Below are positions 40,035 through 64,000 of a stretch of DNA of 64,000 nt, one piece after another; the stretch's first letter is position 1, and every line of letters starts with the position of its first letter. The position numbers and the translations under genes were made by a program. The stretch lies in assembly GCA_002269645.1 (NCBI GenBank), contig NIVC01001987.1, positions 62,001-126,000 on the forward strand, written 5' to 3'. The notes under the pieces were generated by a model. The model ran no database searches, was not told the DNA's origin, and saw nothing but the letters and a program-made list of their open reading frames with translations. Source of the DNA: Macrostomum lignano (taxonomy: Eukaryota).

Positions 40035-41205
40035 ACCCACCCGTCCGCACCCATGTACCCACTGTCCGCCCCCATGTACCCACTGTCCGCCCCCATGTAC
40101 CCACTGTCCGCCCCCATGTACCCACTGTCCGCCCCTCCATGTACCCACCCGTCCGCACCCATGTACCCACTGTCCGCCCCCATGTACTCACTGTCCGCCC
40201 CCATGTACCCACTGTCCGCCCCTCCATGTACCCACTGTCCGCCCCTCCATGTACCCACTGTCTGCCCCTCTATGTACTCATTGTCCGCCCCTCCATGTAC
40301 CCACTGTCCACCCCTCTAGGTACCCATTGTCCGCCCCTCCATGCACCCACTTTCCGCCCCCTGTACCCGCCGTCCGCCCCCATGTATCCACTTTCCGCCC
40401 CCATGTACCCACCGTCCACACCCATGCGCCCGCTGTCCGCCCTTCCATGTACCCACCGTCCACACCCATGCGCCCGCTGTCCGCCCTTCCATGTACCCAC
40501 CTTCCACACCCATGCGCCCGCTGTCCGCCCTTCCATGTACCCACCGTCCACACCCATGCGCCCGCTGTCCGCCCTTCCATGTACCCACCGTCCACACCCA
40601 TGCGCCCGCTGTCCGCCCTTCCATGTACCCACCGTCCACACCCATGCGCCCGCTGTCCGCCCTTCCATGTACCCACCGTCCACACCCATGCGCCCGCTGT
40701 CCGCCCTTCCATGTACCCACCTTCCACACCCATGCGCCCGCTGTCCGCCCTTCCATGTACCCACCGTCCACACCCATGCGCCCGCTGTCCGCCCTTCCAT
40801 GTACCCACCTTCCACACCCATGCGCCCGCTGTCCGCCCTTCCATGTACCCACCGTCCACACCCATGCGCCCGCTGTCCGCCCTTCCATGTACCCACCTTC
40901 CACACCCATGCGCCCGCTGTCCGCCCTTCCATGTACCCACCGTCCACACCCATGCGCCCGCTGTCCGCCCTTCCATGTACCCACCGTCCACACCCATGCG
41001 CCCGTTGTCCGCCCTTCCATGTACCCACCGTCCACACCCATGCGCCCGCTGTCCGCCCTTCCATGTACCCACCGTCCACACCCATGCGCCCGTTGTCCGC
41101 CCTTCCATGTACCCACCGTCCACACCCATGCGCCCGCTGTCCGCCCTTCCATGTACCCACCGTCCACACCCATGCGCCCGCTGTCCGCCCTTCCATGTAC
41201 CCGCT
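40035..41205. repeat. C-rich 22/44-bp minisatellite upstream of the AGL start
   Basis: A ~22-bp unit (CCATGTACCCACTGTCCGCCCC) evolves into a 44-bp higher-order unit. Confidence 0.94.
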
Positions 41206-41396
41206 GTCCGACCCTTTATGCACCCAGTGTCTGGCCCTCCACGTCATCACTATCTGCCCTTCATGTAACCACTGTTGATTATTCCGCTGTAAAAGTTTCA
41301 TTCTTTGTGATGAGTAGCTTTATTTGTTTCGATCTGTTGTGTCTGCACCCCTCTATGTCCTGATATGTTGGCCTGACTCTTGCAGAGGCCTCACTC

Positions 41397-47300: not shown

Positions 47301-50300
47301 GCCTTGAAAAGTAAAGTTTAAAGAGTTGCATCCTATTACTACCAGTAGTACTTGTTGAGAACAAAAAATGACTCGGTGCTACTGGTAGGTGCTGTTTGAA
47401 TGCCAGGAAATCGCATGTGCCGCTGAAATTAAACTCTAATTTGCCCCACCAGGTGGAGAAGGAGCCGGCCGTGACCAAGGGCAAGCGCCTGCTGAACGAA
47501 TTGCACGCCCATCTGGCCGCCGAAGGCTTCGAGGAGCAGTTTGTTGACCAGGTGACCGACTCCGTGGTGGCCGTCACCCGGCACAATCCCGCCAGCCACC
47601 AGAGCGTCATCCTCATCGCCCACACCGCCTTCTCCGCGCCTACCGCCGACTTGCGGCCGCACGTGCCGTCCCTGCCGATCAGCGGCAGCATTGGTGAGGT
47701 GATCTTCGAGCTCACCTTCAGCCAGACACCGGCCAAATTCGTCCGCGACCCCAGCGTCATCAACGGCCTGACGGGCTGCTCGATCGAGGCTCGGGAGCGC
47801 CTGCCGCTGGAGAAGTCGCAGCTTGTGGCTTTTGGTGACGGCCGCCTGCACTTCAAACACCTGCCGCCAGGAGCGGTGAGTTGTAATACAATGCCACTGT
47901 GAGTAGCTAGACGGGCACCTGTGGAGCTATTTCCCTGCTACGATTTCGTCAGCGGCCTGTGGCTTGTGTAATTCTCGCTGATGAGTGCCAACGCCCAATG
48001 CATGCGTGCGGTGCTCATGTTAGCTGTTTACTTTGCTCCTGCCAGGTGGTGGCTATCCGGGTTCTGCTCGACAAGCCCTCGGAGCTGGCCTGCTTGGCCC
48101 TGAAGAAGTCTCTGCTCAGCTGCAAGTCGCCCGAGTCCGGTGTATCTCTTGAGGACGCCGTTTCCGGGCTGAACGCTCACCACCTGTCCCACCTGCTGTT
48201 CCGCTGCGCAGCCGAGGAGGGCGGCGGCATCTACAATGTGCCGAGCTTCGGCGACCTCGTCTACTGCGGGCTGCACCGGCTGGGCCGGCTGATGCGGGAG
48301 GTCAACCTGCGCAAGGATCTGGGACATCCGGTGTGCGGCAATCTGCGGCAGGGCGACTGGCTGCCCAACTATGTCCTGGGCCGGATTGAGAGGTGAGGAT
48401 GCAGCTGTAGTGCCAGTTTACACTTGGTAAATGCCTGTACTGCAGGTGTGCACAGACCCTGGATTGCGTCAGTAGCGGCTCGTCCTGGCAGCTTGGTAAA
48501 TGCCTGTACTGCAGGTGTGCACAGACCCTGGATTGCGCCAGTAGCGGCTCGTCCTGGCAGCTTGGTATTTAGCAGACATTATAGCCAATACGTCTTATAG
48601 TCGAAGGGGAAGGGGAATAAACACAGGGGACTAGCCTCAGCTCCCTGCATTGCACCACAGGTGCGGCTTCGCGCCCAAGCTGGCCGCCTGGCTGTCCGAG
48701 TACCTGAAGGCGATGCGGCAGGTCCCGCGCTACCTCGTCCCGTCCTACTTTGGCTCGGCCGTCATACGCATTCACGACGCCCTGCTGGCGCGGGCCCGCT
48801 CGGTGCTGCTGCCCGCCTGTCCGGCCGCCTCCCGCCTGCTGTTTTGTCTGTCTCTCGGCTCCCTGCAGTTCGTCGGCGACCCGCCCGACTCGGCGCTGCC
48901 GCCGTTGGCGCCGGCGCTGGCCGACCAGCTGCCGCGGCTGTCCATCGCGGCCGGCTTCCCGCACTTCGCCGCCGGCCTGTTCCGCAACTGGGGCCGCGAC
49001 ACCTTCATCTCCCTGCGCGGCCTCCTGCTGCTCACCGGCCGCTGGGACGACGCCCGCTCGGTGCTGCTGGCCTACGCCGGCGCCCTGCGCCACGGCCTCA
49101 TCCCCAACCTGTGCGGCGGCGGCGGCGTCGGCGCCAGGTACAACTGCCGCGATGCCGTGTGGTACTGGCTGCACTGCGTCTGCGAGTTCGTTGCCATGGC
49201 GCCGTCCGGTGCCAGCGTCCTTGCCGATCCCGTGCTGCGCCTCTTCCCAACCGACGATTCTCAGCCGGTGTTTGACTGCGTGCAGCCGCTGCACCAGGTG
49301 AGCTTTTCTCCTGCAAAATTTGCAAGCTTTGTTTTTTGGTTAGCAACAAAGTCCAATGCGCAGCTGCTGGTGTTGTGAGCCAATTTACGCTCTTCTGCGG
49401 AGTTTCCAAGATGCATTGGTGCATTGTGCGATGCACAGTACAATGCCCTGCTAATAACTGTCCTTGTCTGTCTTTCTGAGCACACATGGAGCATCTTCTA
49501 GCATCATAGGCAGCTGCAAGCGTACCTCGGTTCCTCGCTAAGTCAATTGACGCAGTGTCATAGCCAGCGTTAACTAACTAAGCTCCTACCTGCCTCTCCA
49601 GGTGATGCAGGAGGCCCTGCAGCGCCACGCTGACGGCATCGACTTTGTGGAGCGCAACGCCGGGCCGCAGCTGGACTCGCACATGCGGCCCGAAGGCTTC
49701 CGCGTCACCGCCGGCCTCAGCTGGCCCTTCGTAGTTGGCGGCAGCCGCTGGAACTGCGGCACCTGGATGGACAAAATGGGCGGCTCGGAGCGGGCCGGCA
49801 ACCGCGGCGTGCCCGCCACGCCCCGTCACGGCTGCGCTGTTGAGCTGACGGGACTGTGCGCTGCCGTGGTGGACCGGCTGGCCAAATTTCCCAGGTTAGG
49901 CTCTGATTATTTGCTCTGCCAATGCTTCATTAATCAGAGCTTCAACTTACCCTGCAGCAATAAGGTGGCAGCTCTGAGCTGCCGTTGGGAGTTGCCCAAA
50001 ATAATGCACCTATTGCACGCAAATGTGCTGAGTGGCCCATCTAGTTAATTCCTGTATCTGTTGTCCTGGCTATTGTTAATACTCCGCAAGTTAACGTAAA
50101 TTAAAAAACCTAAATCAAGTTTTTATCGATGTGAAGTGCGTTTCTAATATATAAAATTGATGCAGATGCGCTTTAGACGCAGCTCAAAGATTCTACAGCG
50201 ACTCCAGCACGCCTCAGATACGGCTCTACGGCCTCAAGAGTCGTTGCAAAAGCATCGCAAAGACGACTTTCAGCCGACATGTACCGTAACATCTCGTCGT

Positions 50301-52167
50301 TTTAGAGAGTAGTCTAGAGTAACTTCTTTCCTTTTTACCTGTGTTACCTGCAACAACTCTGGGGCGGCGCAAGTGACTCTGAAATGCTTCTTGGCCTTGG
50401 TGCCGTTTTCGTGTCCATTTTATCTGAGTGCCGCTCTGCCTATCGCTCCTGCGCAGGTCCGCCTACCCGTACGAGGGCGTCAAGCACGGCGGCCGGCTCG
50501 TCTCCTGGGCCGACTGGGCCGCCGACCTCGCCAAGCAGTTCGAGCCGCGCTTCTGGCTGCCCGAGTCCGGCCACTACCGCGACCGCTGGCTGCCGGACGT
50601 GGATCCCGCCGACGACCCCGAAGGCCGGCAGTTGCGGCCAAACTTTCTAGTTGCCATGGTGACGGCACCATTCTTGTTCAGCGCCGAGCGAGCCCGCGCC
50701 GCCCTGGAGCTGACGGAGCGCCGGCTGCTTGGCCCGCTCGGCATGCGGACGCTCGACCCCGCCGACCCGGCCTACCGCGGCCGCTACGACAACTCGGACG
50801 ACTCCGGCGACTTCAGCGTGGCCGGCGGCTTCTCCTATCACAATGGGCCCGAGTGGCTGTGGCCGGTGGGCTATTACCTGCGCGCCCGGCTCGCTTTCTC
50901 GGAGCCGCCTTCCGGCCAGGTCGGTCACGTCCAGGCCGTGCTGGCCCGCTGCCAGGCCGCCATGGAGGCCTCCGACTGGCACAGCCTGCCCGAGCTCACC
51001 AACCGGGATGGAGAGGTGAGGCTTCAGCAGCTGTTTCTGCTCATATTGATTAGTTGTAGCTTCCATCTAATCACTGCTCAAAAGTACCGCTGCAGCTACA
51101 ACAGTATGAAAAACCGCCTACTGGAGAGTAGCAAGTAAAGAATCCAGAGAGCAGAGCATGTGTATGTGTAAGGGGGCAGAGCATGTGTAAGGGGCAGAGT
51201 GTGTGTAGGAGGGCAGAGCATGTGTAAGGGGCAGAGTGTGTGTAGGGGGGCAGAGCATGTGTAAGGGGGCAGACCATGTGTAAGGGGGCAGACCATGTGT
51301 AAGGGGGCAGAGCATGTGTAAGGGGCAGAGCATGTGTAAGGGGGCAGAGCATGTGTAAGGGGCAGAGCATGTGTAGGGGGGCAGAGCATGTGTAAGGGGC
51401 AGAGTGTGTGTAGGGGGGCAGAGCATGTGTAAGGGGCAGAGCATGTGTAAGGGGGCAGAGCATGTGTAGGGGGGCAGAGCATGTGTAAGGGGCAGAGCAT
51501 GTGTAAGGGGGCAGAGCATGTGTAAGGCCGTAAGGGGCAGAGTGTGTGTAGGGGGGCAGAGCATGTGTAAGGGGCAGAGCATGTGTAAGGGGCAGAGCAT
51601 GTGTAAGGGGGCAGAGCATGTGTAAGGGGGCAGAGTGTGTGTAGTGGGGGCAGAGCATGTGTAGGGGGCAGAGTGTGTTTAGGGGGCAGAGCATGTGTAG
51701 GGGGCAGAGTGTGTGTAGGGGGGCAGAGTTGGTTCTATTTTGTGCGCAGCCACATTTACTTGAAGCTTGTGCACAAAAGTCGGCTGGGAGATCGGCCGTC
51801 ATGCGATTCACACCCGATGAGGCACAGGCAGTCTAGAAAGTCACCCTGTACACCCCGTATACGCGCGTGTGTGAGTCTGTTGAATTGTCTCAACGATGTC
51901 GCCCAAGGTTTTCACAACCCTCCTGCGAATGTTTTTCATTCCTTCATAGTTCACCGTCCAAGCTGGTCTTGACCTTTTTGTACTCGCTATAAGATATTCG
52001 CTTCAAGATGCTTTATTAACTACTTGTTAGTAGGCGATCTCGTGCAATGACCAACTCCAACCCCCCCCAATGAACTGCAGCCCTGCCCACACAGCTGCCA
52101 AGCCCAGGCCTGGAGCATGGCCACAATGTTCGAGGCAGCCTGCGACCTGCGCAACCTGAAGCTGTGA
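41397..52167 (+). CDS. AGL: Glycogen debranching enzyme (4-alpha-glucanotransferase / amylo-1,6-glucosidase), 11 exons, ~1472 aa
   Basis: Exons 41397-41798, 42258-42716, 43889-44268, 44703-45272, 46959-47220, 47453-47875, 48046-48392, 48661-49297, 49602-49894, 50457-51015, 52081-52167 join in frame (4419 nt). Motifs [63 protein letters not shown]. Confidence 0.97.
42770..43840. repeat. 15-bp minisatellite (TTGGGTTTGAG(C/T)AGC)n filling AGL intron 2
   Basis: About 70 units. Confidence 0.96.
45305..46912. repeat. 72-bp minisatellite filling AGL intron 4
   Basis: About 22 units; the 24-aa periodicity of the ORF track confirms the period. Confidence 0.96.
51145..51727. repeat. ~22-bp minisatellite (GGGGCAGAGCATGTGTAAGG)n in AGL intron 10
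   Basis: Read directly; the G-run length varies. Confidence 0.94.
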
Positions 52168-53381
52168 GCTCGCTGGCCATGAGACTTTGGGATTATTGAG
52201 ACTCCAAGAGAATGCAGACTCTGAGCTGCTCTCTGCTGTAGTATTAATTTTTTCAATATGAACTTCATCTTAGAGAACACCGGATGTGCGAACATACCTT
52301 TGATTTCAGTAGCACCTGCTCTGAGCAGCCCCATGTAGAATTTTTATCAAACCTGTCACAGAGCTCTCAGATTTGCCACGTAGTCCCAAAAGCTGCACCA
52401 TTTTAGTTGGTATTTTGTTTTTGTCCAACCAACAAACTATTTTACTTGCTATGCCCATAAAATGAATCGATTTTGATCTGTCAGAACCAGTTTAGTAAGA
52501 ATTGTTTACAGCTATTTTGCTCTTAGATGTCATTAGTTACCTAATTAGAGTCGCATGCACCAGTGAAATTCGACTGTTTCATTGGCATCGAGATTTTTCC
52601 CTGTCACCCTAGCACTCTAGCTGTAGCGATGCTTGTGTAGTATTTAGTAATAAATATCCATTGGAATGCTTAGTGGCTTTCTTTATATTTTATTTCACAA
52701 TCAGAAAGCATAAAAATATAGCAATTGCCAGGCCTGACCTGAAGCCAGTTTAGCCATTCTCAATTAGAATTAAATTTGAATAAATTCTTTAATTTCTTAT
52801 GCGAATTGAAAACGCTTATTATTTAAAAGAGTAGTAAATGTACTTTATTATGTACCTTATCAGAGGAGAGGGCAATGCCGTTTATGATTGTAGACACTCC
52901 TAGTAATTAGGGAGAAAAAATCAATAAAAAAAAATTTCCGGCTCAAGGCGACGTCGCTCGCCTGGGTACGCAGGGCGGGCAGGGCAGACGGAATCCGGAA
53001 ATTGCAGGAAAAATGAGCCAATACAGACGCAGAGCGGGCGAGTTACATCCAGGATGAGCAATTGATATGTAATTAATACTAGCAATGAGTCAAAGCTTTG
53101 AGATGCAAGTTCAATCTCAAAATGTAAGAAATTGTGTCTCGTCCAGCTTCTAAGTGGTCATTGAATCGTTAGGTGGCGTCTCTTTATTGGCGGTGTGATC
53201 TTGAATGTCATACTTAGCATGGATTTTAAGGGGTCTAGTTTATCATGTTCGTTTTTGTATTCCTGCTGCCATTTATTGATCTCATCAGATTGATCTCAAT
53301 GGGAGCAGTAACGAGCTACCTTGAAAGCCTGACAAATCTTGCAGGTTAAATGTTCAATTTGAAGTACGAAGCAAAGGTGCA

Positions 53382-54440
53382 TCAGCCAGTGGCAAGTGTA
53401 AATCCTTCGCTGTAAATAAGGTGGTCAAAGTCCTTATGAATCCACAATATATCGCAGTCCTCCCACAGTTCTGCATTTTTGACATCCAGCGCTGACAGGC
53501 CCGGAGTCCGCCAAGCGGAGTAGTTTCTGCTGGCGAAGAAGTCAACTATCGTTGCGCTGTCAGTTCCGACCATGTGCTGCCTCAGAAACTCCATCTGCAC
53601 AAAAACCACTCTGAACTGGGTGAACAGACAGCCCGACGTCCTCAGGAAGTCCGCCTCTCCGCCCTCGATGTCCAGCTTGATGACGACGTTCCTCGTGCCG
53701 ATGAGGCCGCACAGCCGCTCGCTCCTTACCGGCATCACGGGGATCGAGTCGACCACGGCTCTACCGAACTTGGTCGCTCCGCCGACGTTGCAGTCGTCAG
53801 GGAAGTTGAGGAAGCTCAGCTGGTCTCCGGATCCGATGAAGTTCCACACGAGCGCCGCATCGAGCGCCGCCGCGTTGAGGCTCAGCCGCAATCGGAGCAG
53901 GTTGCGGATGTTCGCGTCCAGCGACACGACGGGCAGCCCGAGTCTCGCGGCCAGCAGGCTGTAGACACCGATGTTGCAACCCGCGTCGAGGAAGGTCGCG
54001 TTCGGCACCTTCAGAGCCAGTCTCATGGTTGTATGGACCAGCTCACGCTCCCATTCGTGACTGGTCTTGATGGCCTCAGAAATCATGTCTTTCCCAGGGT
54101 AGACGAACATTTGCAGCAGATTTTCGTTGAAATCGCGGATTCGAGCTGGCACGCTGCCCTTGCGGATAATCTGCATAATCTGCGGCACGAACGGGGTGGC
54201 TAGTTTGCACAGCGGGAAACCAGCCGAAGTTTGTTTGTAGGCCTCGGCATTGACGCATAGGCGATGTCGCAGTTTCGGGTCCAGAAAGCTCATGTTCTTC
54301 AGTTCTGAGTAGGCGACGCAATTTTTCGGTCGCATTTCTACGCGTGCGCTGTTCGAGACAGAGTTGTACAGTCTGACGCAGAGATAGGCGGTGCTGCAGG
54401 CTAGTAGTAACAGCACCCTCAGGTACCTGAGGGTCAGCAT
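53382..54440 (-). CDS. FkbM-family (Methyltransf_21-like) SAM methyltransferase copy 1, intronless, N-terminal signal anchor, 352 aa
   Basis: Motif I FLDAGCNIGVYSL, FkbM-type VIKLDIEGGE, and a hydrophobic N-terminus LRVLLLLACSTAYLCV. Confidence 0.85.
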   Translation of the reverse strand: MLTLRYLRVLLLLACSTAYLCVRLYNSVSNSARVEMRPKNCVAYSELKNMSFLDPKLRHRLCVNAEAYKQTSAGFPLCKLATPFVPQIMQIIRKGSVPARIRDFNENLLQMFVYPGKDMISEAIKTSHEWERELVHTTMRLALKVPNATFLDAGCNIGVYSLLAARLGLPVVSLDANIRNLLRLRLSLNAAALDAALVWNFIGSGDQLSFLNFPDDCNVGGATKFGRAVVDSIPVMPVRSERLCGLIGTRNVVIKLDIEGGEADFLRTSGCLFTQFRVVFVQMEFLRQHMVGTDSATIVDFFASRNYSAWRTPGLSALDVKNAELWEDCDILWIHKDFDHLIYSEGFTLATG

Positions 54441-57400
54441 GGTCCTTCCAACTTGCCCTGGGCGCTGTACCCGCTGGTTTATGAATTTCTCAAGTCTGAG
54501 ATCAGTTGCTGAGAGCTAGCTGCCTTGGCTTTATTACAGTGACTCCCAGATCCACGTCCCCGTTGCCTCCAACTGCAACTGCTTGGCTGGCAGCTGTTGA
54601 AAAAAGTAGTGGAGTACAACCTATGCGGACAGCGAAGCAATAGAAACTAAGACAGTGCTGCCTCAGCCCTCTACAGAGGCAAATCGATTTTCCTTTTCTA
54701 CAGTGAAGCGTCAGAACTGCCGCAAACGGTCTATTCGAAATGATATCCATTGCCAAAAATGCACGATTGCTGGAGACGTGCTTAATTTTATTTTATTGCG
54801 ATTTCACTTGCTTCTACGCGTGTTTAACAGAATTTCTGTGGTGTATTCGAGTGCAGCACTCACTCAGACCATTTGCTGGCACAGGGCACGGGGCTACAGT
54901 CCAGTAAGTCTTGCGGATGCAGAGTCACTATAGTAGGGTGGACTGGCAGCAGATTAGGGAACAAGAACCGTTAGTATTAAGAGGACGCGACACGTCTGTC
55001 TCGCTAGTATCAATAGTTATGAAAATCGTAATGGGGACTCGATTGCGGTTTGAAATGCATCAGTTAGGATAACGAATTTACAGTTTTTGCCAAGATTTGA
55101 CATTTTCTCACATTTTGAGACTCTCCAAGACTTTCGAAAAGCCTATGAAGACCTACTGCACATATTTTTTTATTCCGAGGTGATTTCACCAGTTAAGTAA
55201 CTTTGTCATGAAACTAAAGTTACCAGAGAGACCCAGAAATCGAACAAAACTGTAGTGCTTTCTAGCCAGCATACGCTCGTACACCCCATTTGATTTATTT
55301 GCCTGGCAAGTGTTTATACATGTAAATTCAATCTTAACAGTTTCAAAGTAGGTGCTTAAAGTCCTTGTGCAGCCAAATTATATCGCCATCCTCCCAACTT
55401 TTAGCAGCCGACAAGTTCAGCCGCTCCAGGGTCTGCGCTCTCCATGCGCTGTATTTGCGACTGATAAAAAAATCTGTTACAAAAGCCCTGTCATCCGCAG
55501 GCATGTGCCTTTCCAAGATCTCTATTTGAACTGCAGCCACTCTGAACTGGCTGAACAGACAGCCCGACGTCCTCAGGAAGTCCGCCTCTCCGCCCTCGAT
55601 GTCCAGCTTGATGACGACGTTCCTCGTGCCGATGAGGCCGCACAGCCGCTCGCTCCTTACCGGCATCACGGGGATCGAGTCGACCACGGCTCTACCGAAC
55701 TTGGTCGCTCCGCCGACGTTGCAGTCGTCAGGGAAGTTGAGGAAGCTCAGCTGGTCTCCGGATCCGATGAAGTTCCACACGAGCGCCGCATCGAGCGCCG
55801 CCGCGTTGAGGCTCAGCCGCAATCGGAGCAGGTTGCGGATGTTCGCGTCCAGCGACACGACGGGCAGCCCGAGTCTCGCGGCCAGCAGGCTGTAGACACC
55901 GATGTTGCAACCCGCGTCGAGGAAGGTCGCGTTCGGCACCTTCAGAGCCAGTCTCATGGTTGTATGGACCAGCTCACGCTCCCATTCGTGACTGGTCTTG
56001 ATGGCCTCAGAAATCATGTCTTTCCCAGGGTAGACGAACATTTGCAGCAGATTTTCGTTGAAATCGCGGATTCGAGCTGGCACGCTGCCCTTGCGGATAA
56101 TCTGCATAATCTGCGGCACGAACGGGGTGGCTAGTTTGCACAGCGGGAAACCAGCCGAAGTTTGTTTGTAGGCCTCGGCATTGACGCATAGGCGATGTCG
56201 CAGTTTCGGGTCCAGAAAGCTCATGTTCTTCAGTTCTGAGTAGGCGACGCAATTTTTCGGTCGCATTTCTACGCGTGCGCTGTTCGAGACAGAGTTGTAC
56301 AGTCTGACGCAGAGATAGGCGGTGCTGCAGGCTAGTAGTAACAGCACCCTCAGGTACCTGAGGGTCAGCATGGTCCTTCCAACTTGCCCTGGGCGCTGTA
56401 CCCGCTGGTTTATGAATTTCTCAAGTCTGAGATCAGTTGCTGAGAGCTAGCTGCCTTGGCTTTATTACAGTGACTCCCAGATCCACGTCCCCGTTGCCTC
56501 CAACTGCAACTGCTTGGCTGGCAGCTGTTGAAAAAAGTAGTGGAGTACAACCTATGCGGACAGCGAAGCAATAGAAACTAAGACAGTGCTGCCTCAGCCC
56601 TCTACAGAGGCAAATCGATTTTCCTTTTCTACAGTGAAGCGTCAGAACTGCCGCAAACGGTCTATTCGAAATGATATCCATTGCCAAAAATGCACGATTG
56701 CTGGAGACGTGCTTAATTTTATTTTATTGCGATTTCACTTGCTTCTACGCGTGTTTAACAGAATTTCTGTGGTGTATTCGAGTGCAGCACTCACTCAGAC
56801 CATTTGCTGGCACAGGGCACGGGGCTACAGTCCAGTAAGTCTTGCGGATGCAGAGTCACTATAGTAGGGTGGACTGGCAGCAGATTAGGGAACAAGAACC
56901 GTTAGTATTAAGAGGACGCGACACGTCTGTCTCGCTAGTATCAATAGTTATGAAAATCGTAATGGGGACTCGATTGCGGTTTGAAATGCATCAGTTAGGA
57001 TAACGAATTTACAGTTTTTGCCAAGATTTGACATTTTCTCACATTTTGAGACTCTCCAAGACTTTCGAAAAGCCTATGAAGACCTACTGCACATATTTTT
57101 TTATTCCGAGGTGATTTCACCAGTTAAGTAACTTTGTCATGAAACTAAAGTTACCAGAGAGACCCAGAAATCGAACAAAACTGTAGTGCTTTCTAGCCAG
57201 CATACGCTCGTACACCCCATTTGATTTATTTGCCTGGCAAGTGTTTATACATGTAAATTCAATCTTAACAGTTTCAAAGTAGGTGCTTAAAGTCCTTGTG
57301 CAGCCAAATTATATCGCCATCCTCCCAACTTTTAGCAGCCGACAAGTTCAGCCGCTCCAGGGTCTGCGCTCTCCATGCGCTGTATTTGCGACTGATAAAA

Positions 57401-57897
57401 AAATCTGTTACAAAAGCCCTGTCATCCGCAGGCATGTGCCTTTCCAAGATCTCTATTTGAACTGCAGCCACTCTGAACTGGCTGAACAGACAGCCCGACG
57501 TCCTCAGGAAGTCCGCCTCTCCGCCCTCGATGTCCAGCTTGATGACGACGTTCCTCGTGCCGATGAGGCCGCACAGCCGCTCGCTCCTTACCGGCATCAC
57601 GGGGATCGAGTCGACCACGGCTCTACCGAACTTGGTCGCTCCGCCGACGTTGCAGTCGTCAGGGAAGTTGAGGAAGCTCAGCTGGTCTCCGGATCCGATG
57701 AAGTTCCACACGAGCGCCGCATCGAGCGCCGCCGCGTTGAGGCTCAGCCGCAGCCGGAGCAGGTTGCGGATGTTCGCGTCCAGCGACACGACGGGCAGCC
57801 CGAGTCTCGCGGCCAGCAGGCTGTAGACACCGATGTTGCAACCCGCGTCGAGGAAGGTCGCGTTCGGCACCTTCAGAGCGAGTCTCATGGTTGTATG
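53606..57897. repeat. 1931-bp tandem segmental duplication (2.2 units)
   Basis: 53606-55966 is nearly identical to 55537-57897; gene starts (54440/56371) and gene ends (55343/57274) are both offset by 1931. Confidence 0.95.
55343..56371 (-). CDS. FkbM-family methyltransferase copy 2 (chimera: N-terminus of copy 1, C-terminus of copy 3), 342 aa
   Basis: Same motifs; identical to copy 1 through the core and to copy 3 from FSQF onward. Confidence 0.85.
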   Translation of the reverse strand: MLTLRYLRVLLLLACSTAYLCVRLYNSVSNSARVEMRPKNCVAYSELKNMSFLDPKLRHRLCVNAEAYKQTSAGFPLCKLATPFVPQIMQIIRKGSVPARIRDFNENLLQMFVYPGKDMISEAIKTSHEWERELVHTTMRLALKVPNATFLDAGCNIGVYSLLAARLGLPVVSLDANIRNLLRLRLSLNAAALDAALVWNFIGSGDQLSFLNFPDDCNVGGATKFGRAVVDSIPVMPVRSERLCGLIGTRNVVIKLDIEGGEADFLRTSGCLFSQFRVAAVQIEILERHMPADDRAFVTDFFISRKYSAWRAQTLERLNLSAAKSWEDGDIIWLHKDFKHLL

Positions 57898-58380
57898 CAC
57901 AATTTCTGGCTCCCAATTCTTGCTTGTCATGATCTGCATAGAAATTGCGTCGTTCTCAGGATACACAAACATTTGGACAAACTCATTCCTCATATCAAGG
58001 AGTTTCGCGACCAGACTTCCTCTCCTGACAACGTCCAGCAACTGAATATTGAACGGGTGTTGCAGCCGACACAGCGGGTAGCTCCCTCCAGCTCTCACAA
58101 ATGCTTTTTCATCTTTGCAGAGGATGCTCCTGAACTTAGGGTGACGAAAGTCAAATTCGCGCAGCTCCAGGTGGCTGTGGCACCTTACATGCTGAGCTGC
58201 TCCGCTGCTGATCTCCACCAGAGCGTCGCAAAGCGTAGAGTCCAACCTGCAGCTGATGCTGTTGAATTTCGAGCTCTTCTGAGTCATTTTTGCTGGCTGC
58301 CTCTCTTCCAATAGCGCCCAGAAGGCGACGCAGCAGGCAGTAAGTAGGAGAGCCAGAATTTTCTGCCTTGAGAGAGCCAT
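57274..58380 (-). CDS. FkbM-family methyltransferase copy 3, 368 aa
   Basis: Same core; distinct N-terminus MALSRQKILALLLTACCVAFWALL. Confidence 0.85.
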   Translation of the reverse strand: MALSRQKILALLLTACCVAFWALLEERQPAKMTQKSSKFNSISCRLDSTLCDALVEISSGAAQHVRCHSHLELREFDFRHPKFRSILCKDEKAFVRAGGSYPLCRLQHPFNIQLLDVVRRGSLVAKLLDMRNEFVQMFVYPENDAISMQIMTSKNWEPEIVHTTMRLALKVPNATFLDAGCNIGVYSLLAARLGLPVVSLDANIRNLLRLRLSLNAAALDAALVWNFIGSGDQLSFLNFPDDCNVGGATKFGRAVVDSIPVMPVRSERLCGLIGTRNVVIKLDIEGGEADFLRTSGCLFSQFRVAAVQIEILERHMPADDRAFVTDFFISRKYSAWRAQTLERLNLSAAKSWEDGDIIWLHKDFKHLL

Positions 58381-59699
58381 GCCGGATGTCAGATCCCAGA
58401 CTTGGCTGACTTGACGCGGAGTTTAATGGCTGCGCCTCTGCTCTTTATCTTGCCATTCTGGCATTCCAAATCGATTAAAGTCAGGTAAAGCTTTGCAGCT
58501 GGTACAACACATTGTAGTATTGGTTTAGGTGCTTGCGTACAGAAATTGCTGACTTTATGACCAAAGAGTTTTAGATTGGACATCAAGACTTTGCGTCAAA
58601 ATAGAAAATCATTTCTGGAACTACTGGCGGCGTTTGAGCATTCTATTCCCGGAACTTCATAATTCCGGCTTCAGCCCACTTTTTCTGAAGTCATTTAATA
58701 GGAATTTTTCCGGCCTTAGCTTTCCCCATCTCCTCCCAATTCAATTCGGTGGGGGCAGAGGAACGATTGACAATACTGTGGCTCCACTGGGTTGCGTCAC
58801 TCTTGATTAGCTAACGGTCTTATGCGTTTTTATTGACTGACTCTATAAGTTTAATGTACAAGTACTGTACTCATAGCCTGCCCGCCGCGAGCTTGTAGCT
58901 TATTGCACTTGAATGAGTTTATGTTTTGGCGCGGCAAGATGTCTCTCAGTTTGTGAGTTGCAATGTAAATGCACGAGGCTCGAGACGGTGTAGCAAGTCG
59001 TGAATCTCTGCGTACCCAATTTGCCTTTTATTTCTCACTTCGACACGTAATTCTCAATACGGCAGGAATACGAGGCGATCTCGCAGTGGTAGCTGGTCTT
59101 GTGTGGAATGAAAGGCTCAACCCTCCCGCTCCAATATGCTGCAGTCACTGCCGTTTGGCTTGCACCGTCTCAGTACGGACTGCTGCAACGATTAAACACA
59201 ATTGCGCGTAACCAGCTGCCATGGCACCACATGCTTCACTAGTGCTTTGCCGTATGCTTCTCTTCTGACTCTGAACCTTTCTACAGTGTACCCCTGGAGA
59301 CTCTGGGGCACTGCGCGGCATGCAATGAGCTTAGGAAAATGCGTTGATTGGCACGACTCTGCCGTTTTCCAATGCTGCATGCGCAGCTCGCTAATATCAT
59401 TTATGACTTAGCGCCGGACTCAGGAGCAAGAGAAGTTCCTATTAGTAAAAGGTTTTTCGTAAGCTCTCCTTGAGACACGTATGCAGCCTTCTAACCGAAT
59501 CTTTTTTCGATCAGCAGCCAATAGGGTTCGATGAGCTTGAATCAGAGCAACAGTCCTGGCTGGCGAGTGAGCAGAGTTGGAATAATAAAAATGCATCGCA
59601 CTGAAATGCTTCTGTCTGAAGCTCACGAAGCCAGTCGTGTTGTGACCAGAGTTCAAAGTGACTGCAGGATTTGGGACAACTGAAGTTCACTTCCCACTG

Positions 59700-60932
59700 A
59701 TGGCTCGGCCAAAGCAAAATATTATGCTGCTCGCCTTGTGCGCCACGGCCCTCTTCATGGCGTACATTTTGTACTCCAGGGTACGATGGCGCGACCATAT
59801 CAAACCGCGGTCTTTGAAAAAGCATTTCATTTCCGATGCCCATGAACCAAATCCAATCCAAATCGTAGAAACTCCAAAGGAAAGTGGAAGACAGATTTCG
59901 AGTAGGAAAAACGAAACAGCGATCGCGAAGACTGTTGCTACGCGACCGCTGCAAACAGAGTTGCAAACAAGAGCACCGGCAACAATGAAAACAAACTGCA
60001 AAATCTACAATGAGCTGCGCAATGTGGACTTCCAGCAGCCGGCGCTCCGCCACGTCCTGTGCAGCGGCGCCAAGGCGTACGAGAAAGTGGCGGGCGGGTT
60101 CCCCATGTGCCGGCTGCAGAACCCGTTCGATGACAGAATCCTCGAGGTTGTGCGGTCCGGCAGCTCGACCGCCGATCTGCTGGACATGAATAACACCAAG
60201 GTGAAGATGTTTGTCTACTCTGAGATAGACAGAATTTCTGAGGCCATCAAGACCAGTCACGAATGGGAGCGTGAGCTGGTCCATACAACCATGAGACTGG
60301 CTCTGAAGGTGCCGAACGCGACCTTCCTCGACGCGGGTTGCAACATCGGTGTCTACAGCCTGCTGGCCGCGAGACTCGGGCTGCCCGTCGTTTCGCTGGA
60401 CGCGAACATCCGCAACCTGCTCCGGCTGCGGCTGAGCCTCAACGCGGCGGCGCTCGATGCGGCGCTCGTGTGGAACTTCATCGGATCCGGAGACCAGCTG
60501 AGCTTCCTCAACTTCCCTGACGACTGCAACGTCGGCGGAGCGACCAAGTTCGGCAGAGCCGTGGTCGACTCGATCCCCGTGATGCCGGTAAGGAGCGAGC
60601 GGCTGTGCGGCCTCATCGGCACGAGGAACGTCGTCATCAAGCTGGACATCGAGGGCGGAGAGACGGACTTCCTGAGGACGTCGGGCTGTCTGTTCAGCCA
60701 GTTCAGAGTGGTTTTTGTGCAGATGGAGTTTCTGAGGCAGCACATGGTCGGAACTGACAGCGCAACGATAGTGGACTTCTTCGCCAGCAGAAACTACTCC
60801 GCCTGGCGGACTCCGGGCCTGTCAGCGCTGGATGTCAAAAATGCAGAACTGTGGGAGGACTGCGATATATTGTGGATTCATAAGGACTTTGACCACCTTA
60901 TTTACAGCGAAAGATTTACACTTGCCATTTAA
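59700..60932 (+). CDS. FkbM-family methyltransferase copy 4 (inverted), ~410 aa from ATG 59700
   Basis: Same core, copy-1-type C-terminus, and a distinct longer N-terminus MARPKQNIMLLALCATALFMAYILY. Confidence 0.85.
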   Translation: MARPKQNIMLLALCATALFMAYILYSRVRWRDHIKPRSLKKHFISDAHEPNPIQIVETPKESGRQISSRKNETAIAKTVATRPLQTELQTRAPATMKTNCKIYNELRNVDFQQPALRHVLCSGAKAYEKVAGGFPMCRLQNPFDDRILEVVRSGSSTADLLDMNNTKVKMFVYSEIDRISEAIKTSHEWERELVHTTMRLALKVPNATFLDAGCNIGVYSLLAARLGLPVVSLDANIRNLLRLRLSLNAAALDAALVWNFIGSGDQLSFLNFPDDCNVGGATKFGRAVVDSIPVMPVRSERLCGLIGTRNVVIKLDIEGGETDFLRTSGCLFSQFRVVFVQMEFLRQHMVGTDSATIVDFFASRNYSAWRTPGLSALDVKNAELWEDCDILWIHKDFDHLIYSERFTLAI

Positions 60933-63103
60933 TCAGAAGATTATTGGGAAGCGTCAAAACTCACTTATTTATCCTACACAGAATAAATGAGACGCTTCCT
61001 CGTGCAACAACTGCAGTTGCGAGTTCGAGACCAAGTCGGGTCTTATGACAGGGCCCGCTAATCCCAGTAATCGCGAGTGTAATATTCTCGATAACACCGC
61101 TACGAGTACTTCTAGAAATCCTTGATGAAGTCTGGATACATGTTAAGTGCTCTTTGCCCTTTGTTTTGAGTTACTTTATATATTTAACCTTCTGCCGTCA
61201 GGCAGTCCGCCTCAAAAAAACAAATATTGTTAGTAGTACTACTGATAGTAACAAAGGCCTAACACACACTAAAAAATTATTCTCTTTTCTGGCGTGGTAC
61301 ATTAGATAAGCCTTCACTTTGAGCAGCGCTGAGCTGTTCCAACTCAAACGCGACAATTGCTCAACTTCTGGGCAGGTCTTTTCCGATGTTGCAGGGCTCC
61401 CGCGAGTTCATCTGTTTTAACTTTGAACAAAATCACTAAGACAGATTTCGCTAAGATTTGCCATTCTGCATTTTGCTCTTCGGGCTTTGGTTTATCATCG
61501 AGAAAAGTCCGTATTTAAAATACACAAGTGAGCTTCCAGTTTTTAGTGAGCTTCCTCCATTCGAAGTCGCATCTAATGAGCTCTTTCCATGTCTGAGGCT
61601 AGCAAGCAGCTTCTCCGCACTGAGAGAACAGACTCACACAAAAAATCCCGCTGCTACTCCACTCATAGAGGCGATTTCTTGCATTCTGCATTGGCGCAAG
61701 GCAGTGGGAAGCCAGGACGGAGGGATGGAGCTGCTGCGGGTTGGGATAAGCCGGCAGTCACATGAGCCCCAACTATTTGTCATGGCAACCGCTCCCATCA
61801 GCCGAAGCGCGGTGGCAACTCCCCCCATCTTCTGCGCATCCATGCAGCAGAAATCAACTATCGGCCGCCGCCACTGGCCGCCCGCATTCATTTTCCACCC
61901 CTGCATGCTCGCGCAGCGAAGCGCTGCCCCCATCGTCTCGCATGAGCCGCCTGCCTGCCTCTGTCCCTTCATCTCACCTGATGCCAACTCACCTGAGCTG
62001 GGGCTGCTGCTGTTTGCCCGCCTGGTAACTAGAAGCTGGGGCAAATTGCAAACAGGGGGGGGGGGGTACAGAAGCCTTCTCTCTCCGATGCCAGCAGCCG
62101 ACTGGTTTATTGCAGCAGCAGTGCCGCATCGATCTGGCGGCTGGCGGAGGAGGGCGGTGGTGTCGCCATGAATTTTTCATGCCGTGCCGCGGGACTGCTG
62201 GGACGGGAACTCTGCTAGCGAGGCCTGTCGCCCCTCTCCTCCCCTTCGTCTTCTTCGATTGTTCCCTCACTGCAGCTCCGCATGTCTGCAGCTGTTCTGT
62301 CTTTCAAAGACAAAAAGTCGCTTTGCCTTCTTAGTGCCACCTCTTCTTGAGCCTCTCTTCTCTTCTTGAGGCTTCTGGCGTCACTCTGCTGTTAATAAAG
62401 GAGAACCTGGCCACTGCGTAAGCAGAATTGCGGAGAGGATGCTGTTGACAGTATATTCTGTATTTGCTTTTTTGAAAGAGTAGAATTTTGTTACTTAGTT
62501 TTGACACGAATCGATTTTCGCGGAACAAAAACAGTTGATAATTTGTGAACTGACAGAAAAATGACAGGCATTTTTGAAGAGGCAAAATTAAACAGTTGCT
62601 TTGTTTTTTTGTATGCAAAGTGGTTAAAAAGAGGGCAGCGCTTGTACTAGCGAAAGTAACCAAAGTTGGACTGACAGCCAAGGCCACTCTTCCTAATTTC
62701 CGATTTCATTCCTTCATATCCAGTTGGTTTTGCGCGACATTATTCATTGATTCTGTAACGCTTAAATAAAAAGTGTCGGTTCTCATTTGATCGATGCCAA
62801 ATTTCTTCCAAAAGCATCAGGCAGCCTTGAGTTGCCAGTCCAGCTATCTGGTATGAAATTACTGCTAGCTCAGAAAAATACCACTGTATAAAAAAGTGAC
62901 TACTTTTTATAAGAAAAAATTAAAGGTACATAATTTTCGTTTATGAGTTTTTTTATTTGAAAAATTTTAAACTGTTAAATAAAGCCGTGAAAAAATTAAC
63001 TCGAGAGCCTAAATATTCTCTGTTCTGGAGTCGATGCTTTTCAGTTCCTCAGGCAAAGTTGGTCCTCCACTTTATGTGCTCCGGTTTATCCTGGCCGACT
63101 CTC

Positions 63104-64000
63104 TCAGAGCCAGTTGGCATCGGCCCAGCCGGCGATCAGCGTCCAGGTCTTGTTCTGGCCGTCCTTGCTGATGTGGAGGCCCGTGACGTCGACGCTAACG
63201 GTGAAGGTGTCATTGTACTTCATGCCATATGTGGGGCACAGCAGAGTGGCGTTGTTGGTGCCGAAGTCCTGCCACGGAATCTCAATGGCGCGGCGGCCCA
63301 GAGCCAGGTTGGTCGTGTAGTCCTCCTCCGAGATGGCGAACCAGCTCCAACCGCCGTCAATGGACTTCATGCGGCTCCGTTCATCGTAGGCGGTGCCGTA
63401 GATGCTCGAGTCGGTCGGCAGGACGAAGCCAATCTGGCTGATCACGCTGTCCAATGCTTCCCAGCTGGCGCCAAAGTCCACAGAGCGAGAGCAGTGGGCC
63501 CGACCCCCGGGCCTATAGAGCATGCAAGCGTAAATGGCGCCCTCTTTGGGACTGATGACGTAGCTGCGACTGTGGCTGAAGCCAGTGGCCTTGGTCGTCA
63601 CTTCGTAGCATGCTTCAGCAGGTGTCACGTCGGTTGTCTGCTGACAACCATAAAATTCCACGCGCAGCGAGCGGCTGTAGGTCTTTGGCGAGCCAGTCAA
63701 AGGCAGTATCCTGATGTACCGACCTACAATGGCCTTGTTTAGCTTCACGTAAGCCGAGCCGCCAGAGTAAGTAGCCGTGTAAACCTGAAAGTTATCGAAA
63801 TTTGAAAGCAGCTTGTATTGATGCGCTGTTTTCTGGCAACAATGGCTGCCTGCACAGCTTCTAATATAGTTAAAAATATTGCGCAACTTACCTCCTTGGT
63901 GTTGGTGTTGTTGCTGTTGACATCAAACCATAGAAGACCCTCCTCGCTGTATTGAAACCAGAAGGTATCCACCTTGTTGTTGGTATCATCCTTATGCGAC
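63104..64000 (-). CDS. 3' part of a protein with an F5/8 type C (discoidin) domain followed by Asp-box (BNR) repeats
   Basis: Exons >64000-63892 and 63784-63104 join in frame. Discoidin-like FWFQYSEEGLLW and GRYIRILP..LRVEFYGC; Asp boxes SRSVDFGASW and KSIDGGWSW. The 5' end lies outside the window. Confidence 0.75.

What the first reader, a model, noticed from the sequence alone, without database searches (positions are those of the whole stretch)
53382..60932. Type II Golgi-like topology makes these FkbM enzymes candidate glycan O-methyltransferases
Seen: each has a short basic tail, a ~17-aa hydrophobic anchor, a Cys-containing stem (C..Y.EL..F..P.LRH.LC..GFP.C.L..PF) and a lumenal MTase domain, the architecture of Golgi glycan-modifying enzymes. 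Established: FkbM-type enzymes O-methylate small substrates, and O-methylated glycans are reported in planarians, molluscs and nematodes, with the responsible enzymes largely unassigned to my knowledge. Inference: an expanded family that edits surface or mucus glycans. The lack of introns amid intron-rich neighbours suggests retroposition or horizontal origin.
Basis: partly seen in the sequence, partly recalled or inferred. Interest (0 to 1): 0.75.

Follow-up and report, generated by a model that had tools for sequence, protein, structure and literature searches.

The report
Flatworm membrane-anchored FkbM methyltransferase gene cluster
Four intact, intron-less flatworm (Macrostomum lignano) genes encode FkbM-type methyltransferases with an N-terminal membrane anchor. 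They belong to a large uncharacterised family in molluscs, ribbon worms and flatworms, and that family is a credible but untested candidate for the still unidentified enzymes that methylate sugars on invertebrate glycans.

Summary
Window 53382-60932 carries four complete single-exon paralogues: g1 53382-54440(-), g2 55343-56371(-), g3 57274-58380(-) and g4 59700-60932(+). Each has a short basic tail, a 14-19 aa hydrophobic segment, a disordered linker and a confidently folded FkbM-type SAM methyltransferase domain.

The organism is Macrostomum lignano. Relatives number 2,969. Every named close relative is spiralian (bivalves, a gastropod, a nemertean, M. lignano), and about 87% of full-length relatives share the N-terminal anchor with an N-in charge bias (95 of 104). 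A catalytic domain in the secretory-pathway lumen is therefore well supported.

Glycan O-methylation is a reasonable inference but is untested. The papers I could read say the invertebrate glycan methyltransferases are unidentified.

The retroposition or horizontal-transfer idea is not supported. The four relatives checked (one a bivalve) are also intron-less, and prokaryote-like FkbM proteins are far more distant.

New findings:
- The ~507-nt SAM-binding core is homogenised by gene conversion (Ks 0.04, against 1.1-1.9 in the flanks).
- g2 is a perfect chimera (g1 head, g3 tail) made by a 1931-bp unequal-crossover duplication. It is absent from the public assembly and may be an assembly artefact.

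Interest is moderate: a testable candidate family, not a demonstrated function.

The parts
53382..54440 (-). g1: 352-aa FkbM-family methyltransferase. Head type A (tail MLTLRYLR plus a 14-aa hydrophobic segment) and C-terminal type A (…YSEGFTLATG).
   Evidence: Intact ORF. PF05050 23.5 bits. 98.9% identical to an unannotated ORF in the public M. lignano contig. Poly(A) signals 105 and 194 nt after the stop.
55343..56371 (-). g2: 342-aa chimera. Upstream region, head and core are those of g1. Core, C-terminal type B and downstream region are those of g3.
   Evidence: 100% DNA identity to g1 on the 5' side and to g3 on the 3' side. Absent from the syntenic public contig, which has only three copies. 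No exact protein on record.
57274..58380 (-). g3: 368-aa paralogue. Head type C (MALSRQK plus a 17-aa segment) and C-terminal type B (…HKDFKHLL).
   Evidence: Intact ORF. AF2 model has pLDDT 87.7 and pTM 0.81, with a TM helix at 5-25, a disordered stretch at 31-47 and a Rossmann methyltransferase fold. 99.5% identical to the ORF in L004.
59700..60932 (+). g4: 410-aa paralogue in inverted orientation. It has the longest linker, a 19-aa hydrophobic segment and C-terminal type A.
   Evidence: ATG at 59700. 97.6% identical to BOX15_Mlig015726g1 (P0001). 726-nt inverted repeat with g1 at 98%.
53606..54112 (-). Homogenised SAM-binding core (~507 nt) of g1. The same tract lies at 55537-56043 (g2), 57468-57974 (g3) and 60205-60711 (g4, + strand).
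   Evidence: Core Ks is 0.04 between paralogues, against Ks 1.1-1.9 in the N-terminal and type A/B C-terminal parts. Identity is 97-100% in alignment blocks 1300-1600. The protein core is 100% identical apart from one residue.
53621..57752 (.). Perfect tandem duplication. It comprises 2.14 copies of a 1931-bp unit, and the crossover lies within the 270 nt shared by all three cores.
   Evidence: 53621-55821 equals 55552-57752 with 0 mismatches in 2201 nt. Spacing is exactly 1931 nt. The extra unit is missing in GCA_002269645.1 contig NIVC01000543.1.

Best explanation
The locus is a small, actively recombining cluster of Macrostomum lignano genes. They encode class I, FkbM-family, S-adenosylmethionine-dependent methyltransferases.

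Shown or strongly inferred from sequence:
- Each protein enters the secretory pathway through an N-terminal signal-anchor (N-in, C-out).
- A short basic tail therefore faces the cytosol, a disordered linker follows the membrane, and the catalytic domain sits in the ER/Golgi lumen.
- The genes are intact and under purifying selection.
- They share a SAM-binding core that gene conversion keeps nearly identical. The N-terminal cap (about residues 60-160) and the C-terminal ~70 residues have diverged.
- g2 is a new head/tail combination produced by unequal crossing-over between g3 and g1.

Inferred, not shown:
- In the Golgi lumen the enzymes use SAM imported by a SAM transporter to O-methylate hydroxyl groups of sugars on N- or O-glycans or glycolipids, as glycosyl- and sulfotransferases of the same topology modify glycans.
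- The divergent cap and tail would set acceptor specificity.
For: Integrity and selection:
- Four full ORFs.
- Ka/Ks is 0.25-0.40 in the diverged parts.
- Poly(A) signals lie 44-105 nt after each stop.

FkbM family:
- PF05050 and TIGR01444 score near threshold for these proteins, but 53 of 55 relatives match PF05050.
- G180, G184, K281, D283 and E288 are invariant, and D178, N182, N226, E285 and E310 are nearly invariant.
- The AF2 model (pLDDT 87.7) best matches annotated FkbM proteins (Fadolivirus FkbM, E 1.4e-12, TM 0.78, rmsd 3.0). The matches include FkbM domains in giant-virus proteins annotated as 'capsular polysaccharide synthesis protein' and 'glycosyltransferase'.

Topology:
- TM helix at residues 5-25 and a disordered stretch at 31-47.
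- 104 of 120 relatives have the anchor, with median length 18 aa, and 95 of 104 show positive-inside polarity.
- A Cys pair is conserved in 62-64% of relatives, and Macrostomum-invariant Cys residues sit at positions 67, 88, 104 and 243.
- N-glycosylation sequons number 3.16 per protein against 2.41 expected, with a recurrent site in about 40% of relatives.

Taxonomy fits groups known for methylated glycans. All 11 named close relatives are flatworm, mollusc or nemertean.

Literature:
- Planarian N-glycans are heavily and selectively methylated, and the enzymes are unknown (PMC5936828).
- The same gap is stated for C. elegans, where a Golgi SAM transporter is needed (PMC6422873 and PMC7614267).
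- An algal FkbM gene beside sugar-modification genes has already been suggested to methylate glycans (PMC5082852).
- An FkbM-domain transcript is infection-responsive in a clam (PMC9125321).

From my own knowledge, not tested here: bacterial FkbM-family or related enzymes such as NoeI (2-O-methylfucose of Nod factors) and RfbT (O-antigen perosamine) methylate sugars. Two relatives weakly hit the RfbT Pfam model.
Against: - There are no expression, localisation or activity data.
- I found no glycomic data for Macrostomum.
- The substrate cannot be read from the sequence. Solved structures give only generic class I methyltransferase matches (query-normalised TM 0.39 or less).
- g4 violates the positive-inside rule (charge difference -3).
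- g1 and g2 have only a 14-aa h-region followed by a plausible signal-peptidase site, so they may be cleaved and secreted rather than Golgi-anchored.
- FkbM itself acts on a macrolide, not a glycan.
- Only open-access papers could be searched, so a published assignment in a subscription journal could have been missed.
Confidence: 0.5

Rival explanations
1. The enzymes are lumenal or secreted methyltransferases that act on something other than glycans. Candidates are a lipid, a small metabolite or defence compound, or a secreted protein or peptide.
For: The name-giving enzyme FkbM methylates a macrolide (established knowledge). The structure search gives no acceptor information. g1 and g2 could have a cleavable signal peptide (sequence). 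The family is lineage-expanded and fast-evolving in the presumed acceptor-binding parts, with Ka 0.4-0.6, as is common for defence or secondary-metabolism enzymes.
Against: The type II anchor, linker and catalytic domain layout seen in about 87% of relatives is typical of glycan-modifying Golgi enzymes. The taxonomic spread matches groups with methylated glycans. No biosynthetic genes lie next to the cluster; the neighbours are glycogen debranching enzyme and a discoidin-domain gene.
Confidence: 0.3
2. The genes entered the Macrostomum genome recently, by retroposition of a spliced mRNA or by horizontal transfer from a bacterium or virus.
For: The coding sequences lack introns while the neighbours are multi-exon. 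The FkbM family is mostly prokaryotic and viral. GC3 (0.70-0.74) is somewhat below that of neighbouring exons (0.82-0.88).
Against: The Mercenaria homologue, another M. lignano paralogue and two further relatives are also uninterrupted ORFs. The nearest named relatives are all spiralian animals with the same anchor. Prokaryote-like FkbM proteins score only 24-42 bits, against 52-97 for molluscs and the nemertean and 200-240 for M. lignano paralogues. No intron-bearing parent gene was found.
Confidence: 0.05
3. g2 is not a real gene. The perfect 1931-bp repeat unit would be an assembly artefact, an over-expansion of a near-identical tandem repeat, and the true locus would have three genes.
For: There are 0 mismatches in 2201 nt at a lag of 1931. 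The syntenic public contig, 98.6% identical, has only g1, g3 and g4. No record of the g2 protein exists anywhere.
Against: The structure is exactly what unequal crossing-over inside the converted core predicts. Copy-number polymorphism between haplotypes or sub-genomes is plausible in M. lignano. The other three window proteins are also not on record as exact sequences, so absence from the collection is uninformative.
Confidence: 0.4
4. The hydrophobic segment inserts with the opposite orientation (N-out, C-in), or is not a membrane segment at all, so the methyltransferase domain is cytosolic.
For: g4 has more positive charge after the segment than before it (-3). The g1, g2 and g3 charge differences are only +1.
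Against: 95 of 104 relatives have positive-inside polarity for N-in. Cysteines are conserved and sequons modestly enriched in the C-terminal domain. The segment starts at about residue 10, as in signal anchors.
Confidence: 0.05

Closest known systems
FkbM family methyltransferases (Pfam PF05050 Methyltransf_21; TIGR01444). The prototype is FkbM, the 31-O-methyltransferase of FK506/FK520 biosynthesis.
   Same: Class I Rossmann SAM-binding fold. DxGxNxG motif I and the KxDIEGxE motif. The HMM matches cover the family-specific half of the domain. The model superposes on annotated FkbM proteins.
   Different: The prototype is a soluble bacterial enzyme acting on a macrolide. These proteins carry an N-terminal membrane anchor, a linker and an extra Cys-containing N-terminal cap. 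They are animal genes and score only at the family thresholds.
Bacterial sugar O-methyltransferases of the FkbM type or related, such as NoeI (Nod-factor 2-O-methylfucose) and RfbT (Vibrio O-antigen). Recalled from memory.
   Same: The proposed chemistry is the same: SAM-dependent O-methylation of a terminal sugar. Two family relatives weakly hit the RfbT Pfam model.
   Different: Those enzymes act in the bacterial cytoplasm or at its membrane on lipid-linked or oligosaccharide intermediates. No close sequence relationship was shown here (24-42 bits to prokaryote-like FkbM proteins).
Giant-virus and algal FkbM proteins linked to glycan synthesis.
   Same: These give the best structural matches (Fadolivirus FkbM, TM 0.78). 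Further matches are FkbM domains in giant-virus proteins annotated 'capsular polysaccharide synthesis protein' and 'glycosyltransferase'. An Ostreococcus FkbM gene beside sugar-modifying genes has been proposed to methylate glycans (PMC5082852).
   Different: The viral and algal proteins lack the spiralian N-terminal anchor and cap. Identity is only 13-20%. Their functions are also only predicted.
Type II Golgi glycan-modifying enzymes: glycosyltransferases, sulfotransferases, and the plant DUF579 glucuronoxylan/arabinogalactan O-methyltransferases (PMC6508755, listed; not read).
   Same: Same layout: a short basic cytosolic tail, a single TM of about 17-20 aa, a flexible stem and a lumenal catalytic domain. 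They often have single coding exons. The plant enzymes show that Golgi glycan O-methylation by anchored SAM enzymes exists.
   Different: Their catalytic domains are unrelated (DUF579 is not FkbM). This is an analogy of how the protein would work, not family membership.
Uncharacterised animal 'Methyltransferase FkbM domain-containing' genes, for example in M. lignano and bivalves, amphioxus fkbmc, and a clam infection-responsive transcript.
   Same: This is the same protein family, and the window genes are members of it.
   Different: None has an assigned function. g1 and g3 are not annotated in the public M. lignano record for the syntenic contig.

Membership tests
FkbM family (PF05050 / TIGR01444) | Score at or above the curated HMM cut-off | tested here: inconclusive
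   PF05050 scores are g1 23.5, g4 23.0, g2 22.3 and g3 22.0 bits against a cut-off of 22.7. TIGR01444 scores 35.9-36.7 against 37.7. Relatives reached at E<1e-19 by the family profile score clearly: 53 of 55 hit PF05050 with best E 2.6e-16, and TIGR01444 gives 61-65 bits.
FkbM family (PF05050 / TIGR01444) | SAM-binding motif I (DxGxNxG) and the family's KxDxEGxE motif | tested here: met
   D178, G180, N182, G184, K281, D283, E285 and E288 (g3 numbering) are invariant or at least 90% conserved in 55 relatives, and are present in all four window proteins.
FkbM family (PF05050 / TIGR01444) | Fold like other FkbM proteins | tested here: met
   The AF2 model has pLDDT 87.7. The top BFVD matches are annotated FkbM methyltransferases (E 1.4e-12, TM 0.78, rmsd 3.0 Å). 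PDB gives only generic class I methyltransferases, with 2py6 (FkbM) at sequence E 2.6e-4.
FkbM family (PF05050 / TIGR01444) | SAM-dependent O-methyl transfer | not testable with these tools
   Needs an enzyme assay.
Type II (signal-anchor) Golgi glycan-modifying enzyme | Short basic cytosolic tail and a single N-terminal hydrophobic segment of about 17-22 aa that is not cleaved | tested here: inconclusive
   The tails carry 2 basic residues. The segments are 14 aa (g1, g2), 17 aa (g3) and 19 aa (g4); the median in relatives is 18 aa. No signal-peptide predictor was available, so cleavage after ...CSTA in g1 and g2 cannot be excluded.
Type II (signal-anchor) Golgi glycan-modifying enzyme | Positive-inside charge polarity (N-in, C-out) | tested here: met
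   95 of 104 relatives have a more positive N-flank. g1, g2 and g3 score +1, and g4 is an exception at -3.
Type II (signal-anchor) Golgi glycan-modifying enzyme | Flexible stem between the membrane and the catalytic domain | tested here: met
   pLDDT is below 50 at residues 31-47 of g3, then a confident fold follows. Linker length varies from about 15 to 90 aa among g1-g4.
Type II (signal-anchor) Golgi glycan-modifying enzyme | Golgi residence and a glycan acceptor | not testable with these tools
   Needs localisation, glycomics and enzyme assays.
Processed retrogene | An intron-containing parent gene, plus a poly(A) remnant and target-site duplication at the copy | tested here: not met
   All four relatives examined, from a bivalve, M. 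lignano and two unnamed eukaryotic assemblies, have uninterrupted coding sequences. The copies are related by a tandem 1931-bp unit and an inverted repeat, not by dispersed insertion. Poly(A) remnants and target-site duplications were not searched for systematically.
Recent horizontal transfer from a prokaryote or virus | Nearest relatives are non-animal, with foreign base composition | tested here: not met
   The nearest named relatives are spiralian animals. Prokaryote-like FkbM proteins give 24-42 bits, against 52-97 for molluscs and the nemertean. GC3 is 0.70-0.74, close to the host exon bias.

The most novel reading that the evidence does not exclude
The spiralian clade of membrane-anchored FkbM proteins would be the long-sought family of animal glycan O-methyltransferases. 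In this cluster, acceptor specificity would be diversified by recombining divergent N-terminal cap and C-terminal modules around a SAM-binding core kept identical by gene conversion. g2 would be a freshly made new combination.
Probability: 0.35. Interest if true: 0.75.

Novelty: new variant of a known kind. Interest (0 to 1): 0.5.

Why it matters
O-methylated sugars on N- and O-glycans are a hallmark of molluscs, planarians and nematodes, and they are targets of innate-immune and fungal lectins. The papers I could read (2018-2023) say that no animal enzyme making them has been identified; only a Golgi SAM transporter is known.

This family has four properties that make it a concrete, small set of genes to test:
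- the right chemistry (the FkbM family contains O-methyltransferases);
- the right predicted compartment (the secretory-pathway lumen);
- the right taxonomic spread among named relatives;
- lineage-specific expansion.

M. lignano is tractable for RNAi and transgenesis.

The locus is also a clean example of concerted evolution confined to a cofactor-binding core, with module shuffling by unequal crossover.

Tried and rejected
- **Word-index homologue searches** returned few hits. The exhaustive profile search was needed to see the family.
- **PDB sequence and fold searches** gave only generic class I methyltransferases and no acceptor clue.
- **The bacterial promoter/terminator scan** was at chance level and is irrelevant for a eukaryotic locus.
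- **Exact-protein look-ups of g1-g4** found nothing, so there is no independent transcript or assembly evidence, and none for the g2 chimera.
- **Ten literature searches** found no paper assigning an animal FkbM protein to glycan methylation. Wohlschlager et al. 2014 (PMC4103367) was not held.
- **Taxon names** could be recovered for only about a third of the relatives queried. I therefore could not test whether nematodes belong to this clade or whether it is absent from insects and vertebrates.
- **HGT or retroposition** was rejected on gene structure and similarity ranking.
- **Pseudogene status** was rejected, because the ORFs are intact and Ka/Ks is 0.25-0.40.
- **A cytosolic orientation** was rejected as unlikely, given the family-wide charge bias.

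Full report
**What is there**

Window 53382-60932 holds four paralogous, uninterrupted ORFs:
- g1, 53382-54440(-), 352 aa.
- g2, 55343-56371(-), 342 aa.
- g3, 57274-58380(-), 368 aa.
- g4 on the + strand. The ORF tool starts g4 at a GTG (59658), but the first ATG is at 59700 (MARPKQN…), giving 410 aa to 60932.

No further copies or fragments occur in the window. Each gene has AATAAA or ATTAAA 44-105 nt after its stop. Coding GC3 is 0.70-0.74, against about 0.42 GC in the flanking DNA.

**Organism and synteny**

The closest database proteins are Macrostomum lignano hypothetical proteins. g4 is 97.6% identical to BOX15_Mlig015726g1. The public contig NIVC01000543.1 (GCA_002269645.1) aligns to window 50013-64000 in pieces of 92.5-98.6% identity, and at 98.1-98.6% across the gene cluster.

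That contig has only three copies, the counterparts of g1, g3 and g4. Only the g4 counterpart is annotated there.

The neighbours are a multi-exon glycogen debranching enzyme upstream (window exons 44707-45276, 48650-49378 and 50428-51138, + strand) and a discoidin (F5/8 type C) domain gene downstream. A multi-exon Piwi/Argonaute gene lies at 14135-18396(-) and a reverse transcriptase ORF at 24355-25788. The observation of intron-less genes among intron-rich neighbours is therefore correct.

**Protein anatomy**

All four proteins start with a basic tail followed by an uncharged hydrophobic segment of 14 aa (g1, g2), 17 aa (g3) or 19 aa (g4).

An AlphaFold2 model of g3, built on 55 relatives, is confident (mean pLDDT 87.7, pTM 0.81). 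It shows:
- a helix at residues 5-25;
- a disordered stretch at 31-47 (pLDDT below 50);
- one compact α/β domain from about residue 65 to the end.

It lies in the folded N-terminal cap of the domain, not in a flexible stem.

**Family membership**

Taken alone, the window proteins sit on the thresholds. PF05050 scores 22.0-23.5 bits against 22.7, and TIGR01444 scores 35.9-36.7 against 37.7.

The family context settles the question:
- A profile of the Macrostomum sequences finds 2,969 proteins at E≤1e-3 and 578 at E≤1e-10.
- 53 of 55 sampled relatives hit PF05050.
- The conserved columns are the SAM motif DxGxNxG, an acidic residue after β2, N226, KxDIEGxE and M-E-W. All are present in g1-g4.
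- The model's best structural matches are annotated FkbM methyltransferases of giant viruses and phages (best E 1.4e-12, TM 0.78, rmsd 3.0 Å). Some of these are FkbM domains in proteins annotated 'capsular polysaccharide synthesis protein' or 'glycosyltransferase'.
- Solved structures give only generic class I methyltransferases, so no acceptor can be inferred.

**Topology**

- Of 120 full-length relatives, 104 have an N-terminal hydrophobic segment, starting at about residue 10 with a median length of 18 aa.
- In 95 of those 104, the 15 residues before the segment are more positive than the 15 after it. That is the polarity expected for N-in, C-out insertion.
- A Cys pair is conserved in 62-64% of relatives.
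- N-glycosylation sequons are modestly enriched (3.16 against 2.41 expected from shuffles), with a recurrent site in about 40% of relatives.

Together these make a lumenal or extracytoplasmic catalytic domain very likely.

Two things remain open:
- Is the segment a stable anchor or a cleaved signal peptide? g1 and g2 have a 14-aa h-region followed by …CSTA, and no predictor was available.
- g4 has a reversed charge difference (-3).

Golgi residence cannot be computed.

**Origin**

Every relative for which a source gave a name is spiralian:
- M. lignano, with at least eight further paralogues;
- the bivalves Dreissena, Mya, Mercenaria, Ostrea and Ylistrum;
- the gastropod Gigantopelta;
- the nemertean Tubulanus.

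BLAST bit scores fall from 200-240 (M. lignano paralogues) to 52-97 (molluscs and nemertean) to 24-42 (prokaryote-like FkbM proteins lacking the anchor).

The Mercenaria gene, the M. lignano paralogue Mlig026243 and two further relatives on eukaryote-sized or metagenomic contigs all have uninterrupted coding sequences.

Intron-lessness is therefore an old family trait, as in many Golgi transferases. It is not a sign of recent retroposition or transfer into Macrostomum. An ancient bacterial origin of the whole animal clade is neither shown nor excluded.

**Evolution of the cluster (new here)**

DNA comparison shows a mosaic:
- g1 and g2 are 100% identical through the upstream region, head and core.
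- g2 and g3 are 100% identical through the core, C-terminal part and downstream region.
- g1 and g4 share the other C-terminal type (726-nt inverted repeat, 98%).

A ~507-nt core is almost identical in all copies. It lies at 53606-54112 in g1, 55537-56043 in g2, 57468-57974 in g3 and 60205-60711 in g4. Core Ks is 0.04 between paralogues, while the N-terminal cap and the A/B C-terminal parts have Ks 1.1-1.9 and Ka/Ks 0.25-0.40. The same pattern holds in the public assembly. This indicates gene conversion confined to the SAM-binding core, with purifying selection on the diverged parts.

At a lag of 1931 nt the sequence is identical for 2201 nt without a single mismatch (53621-55821 = 55552-57752). 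g2 is thus the exact product expected from unequal crossing-over between the cores of g3 and g1. Because the public assembly lacks it and no record of its protein exists, it is either a very recent copy-number variant or an assembly artefact. I rate these about equally likely.

**Function**

Shown: intact, selected, FkbM-type SAM methyltransferases that almost certainly face the secretory lumen.

Inferred: O-methylation of glycans. The grounds are as follows.
- The layout is that of Golgi glycan-modifying enzymes.
- The same gap is stated for C. elegans in 2019 and 2023, where a Golgi SAM transporter is required (PMC6422873 and PMC7614267).
- FkbM-type enzymes have been proposed for glycan methylation in an alga (PMC5082852).
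- From my own knowledge, bacterial relatives such as NoeI and RfbT methylate sugars.
- The taxa that hold the family include groups with methylated glycans.

Against this:
- There is no experimental evidence at all.
- I found no Macrostomum glycome.
- The prototype FkbM acts on a macrolide.
- A lumenal or secreted enzyme could equally methylate lipids, metabolites or proteins.

I put the glycan reading at about 0.5 and a non-glycan lumenal or secreted substrate at about 0.3.

**Novelty**

The genes are members of a known enzyme family, and members of this animal clade are already in databases as 'FkbM domain-containing' or hypothetical proteins. Animal FkbM-domain genes have been noted in passing in a clam infection transcriptome (PMC9125321) and in amphioxus (PMC12905397).

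The membrane-anchored spiralian clade has no characterised member. I found no paper assigning it a role, within the open-access library only.

I class it as a new variant of a known kind. The value lies in a sharply testable candidate for an open question in invertebrate glycobiology, not in a demonstrated mechanism.

Noticed in passing
window 53574-54203(+), 55352-56134(+), 57283-58314(+), 59511-60743(-): Each methyltransferase gene carries a long stop-free ORF (209-410 aa) on the opposite strand, nearly as long as the gene itself. This is probably a by-product of GC3-rich codon usage. It could mislead gene callers.
   Followed up: no
g1, g3 and g4 versus L004 (GCA_002269645.1 NIVC01000543.1), N-terminal cap codons (g3 residues 60-160): Between the window and the public assembly, all 10 differences in the cap region are non-synonymous (3, 1 and 6) and none is synonymous. 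In the core, 6 of the 8 differences are synonymous. The numbers are small (roughly p≈0.06 under neutrality), but this could hint at diversifying selection on the presumed acceptor-binding part.
   Followed up: partly
L004 5667-6722(-) and 7631-8734(-): The counterparts of g1 and g3 are intact ORFs in the public M. lignano contig, but they are not among its called genes. Only the g4 counterpart (P0001, marked partial) is annotated.
   Followed up: partly
window 51127-51722: A dense array of about 18-19-nt direct repeats (22 overlapping 124-nt copies) lies just after the last recognisable glycogen debranching enzyme exon. The region is only about 92.5% identical to the public contig, against about 98.5% elsewhere.
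   Followed up: no
window 44707-51138(+): A multi-exon glycogen debranching enzyme gene (hDGE_amylase and GDE_C domains on separate ORF pieces) lies directly upstream of the cluster.
   Followed up: partly
window 14135-18396(-): A Piwi/Argonaute gene is split into exons: the Piwi domain at 14135-14899, and ArgoN/ArgoL1/PAZ at 17587-18396.
   Followed up: no
window 24355-25788(+): A 477-aa ORF with a reverse transcriptase domain (RVT_1, E 1.5e-28) sits in a GC-rich block flanked by AT-rich DNA. This is a retroelement insertion.
   Followed up: no
window 39929-41363, 42917-43888 and 45304-47088(-): These are GC-rich, low-complexity stretches with long ORFs open in several frames on both strands. 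Their Pfam hits are repeat-driven (GLTT repeats, many spurious 'Synapsin_N'-type matches). They are likely simple-sequence or repeat DNA rather than genes. 45304-47088(-) overlaps the debranching-enzyme region.
   Followed up: no
L004 14015-15102(-), which should correspond to about window 63100-64000 and beyond: The public annotation has a 326-aa F5/8 type C (discoidin, often sugar-binding) domain gene next to the cluster. The two long window ORFs there (62957-63742+, 63104-63886-) gave no Pfam hit.
   Followed up: partly
P0004 (BOX15_Mlig019506g3, 504 aa): This M. lignano paralogue contains an internal duplication of about 140 aa, running from the cap to the SAM-binding motif. It suggests that unequal recombination, or mis-assembly, affects other members of the family too.
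   Followed up: no
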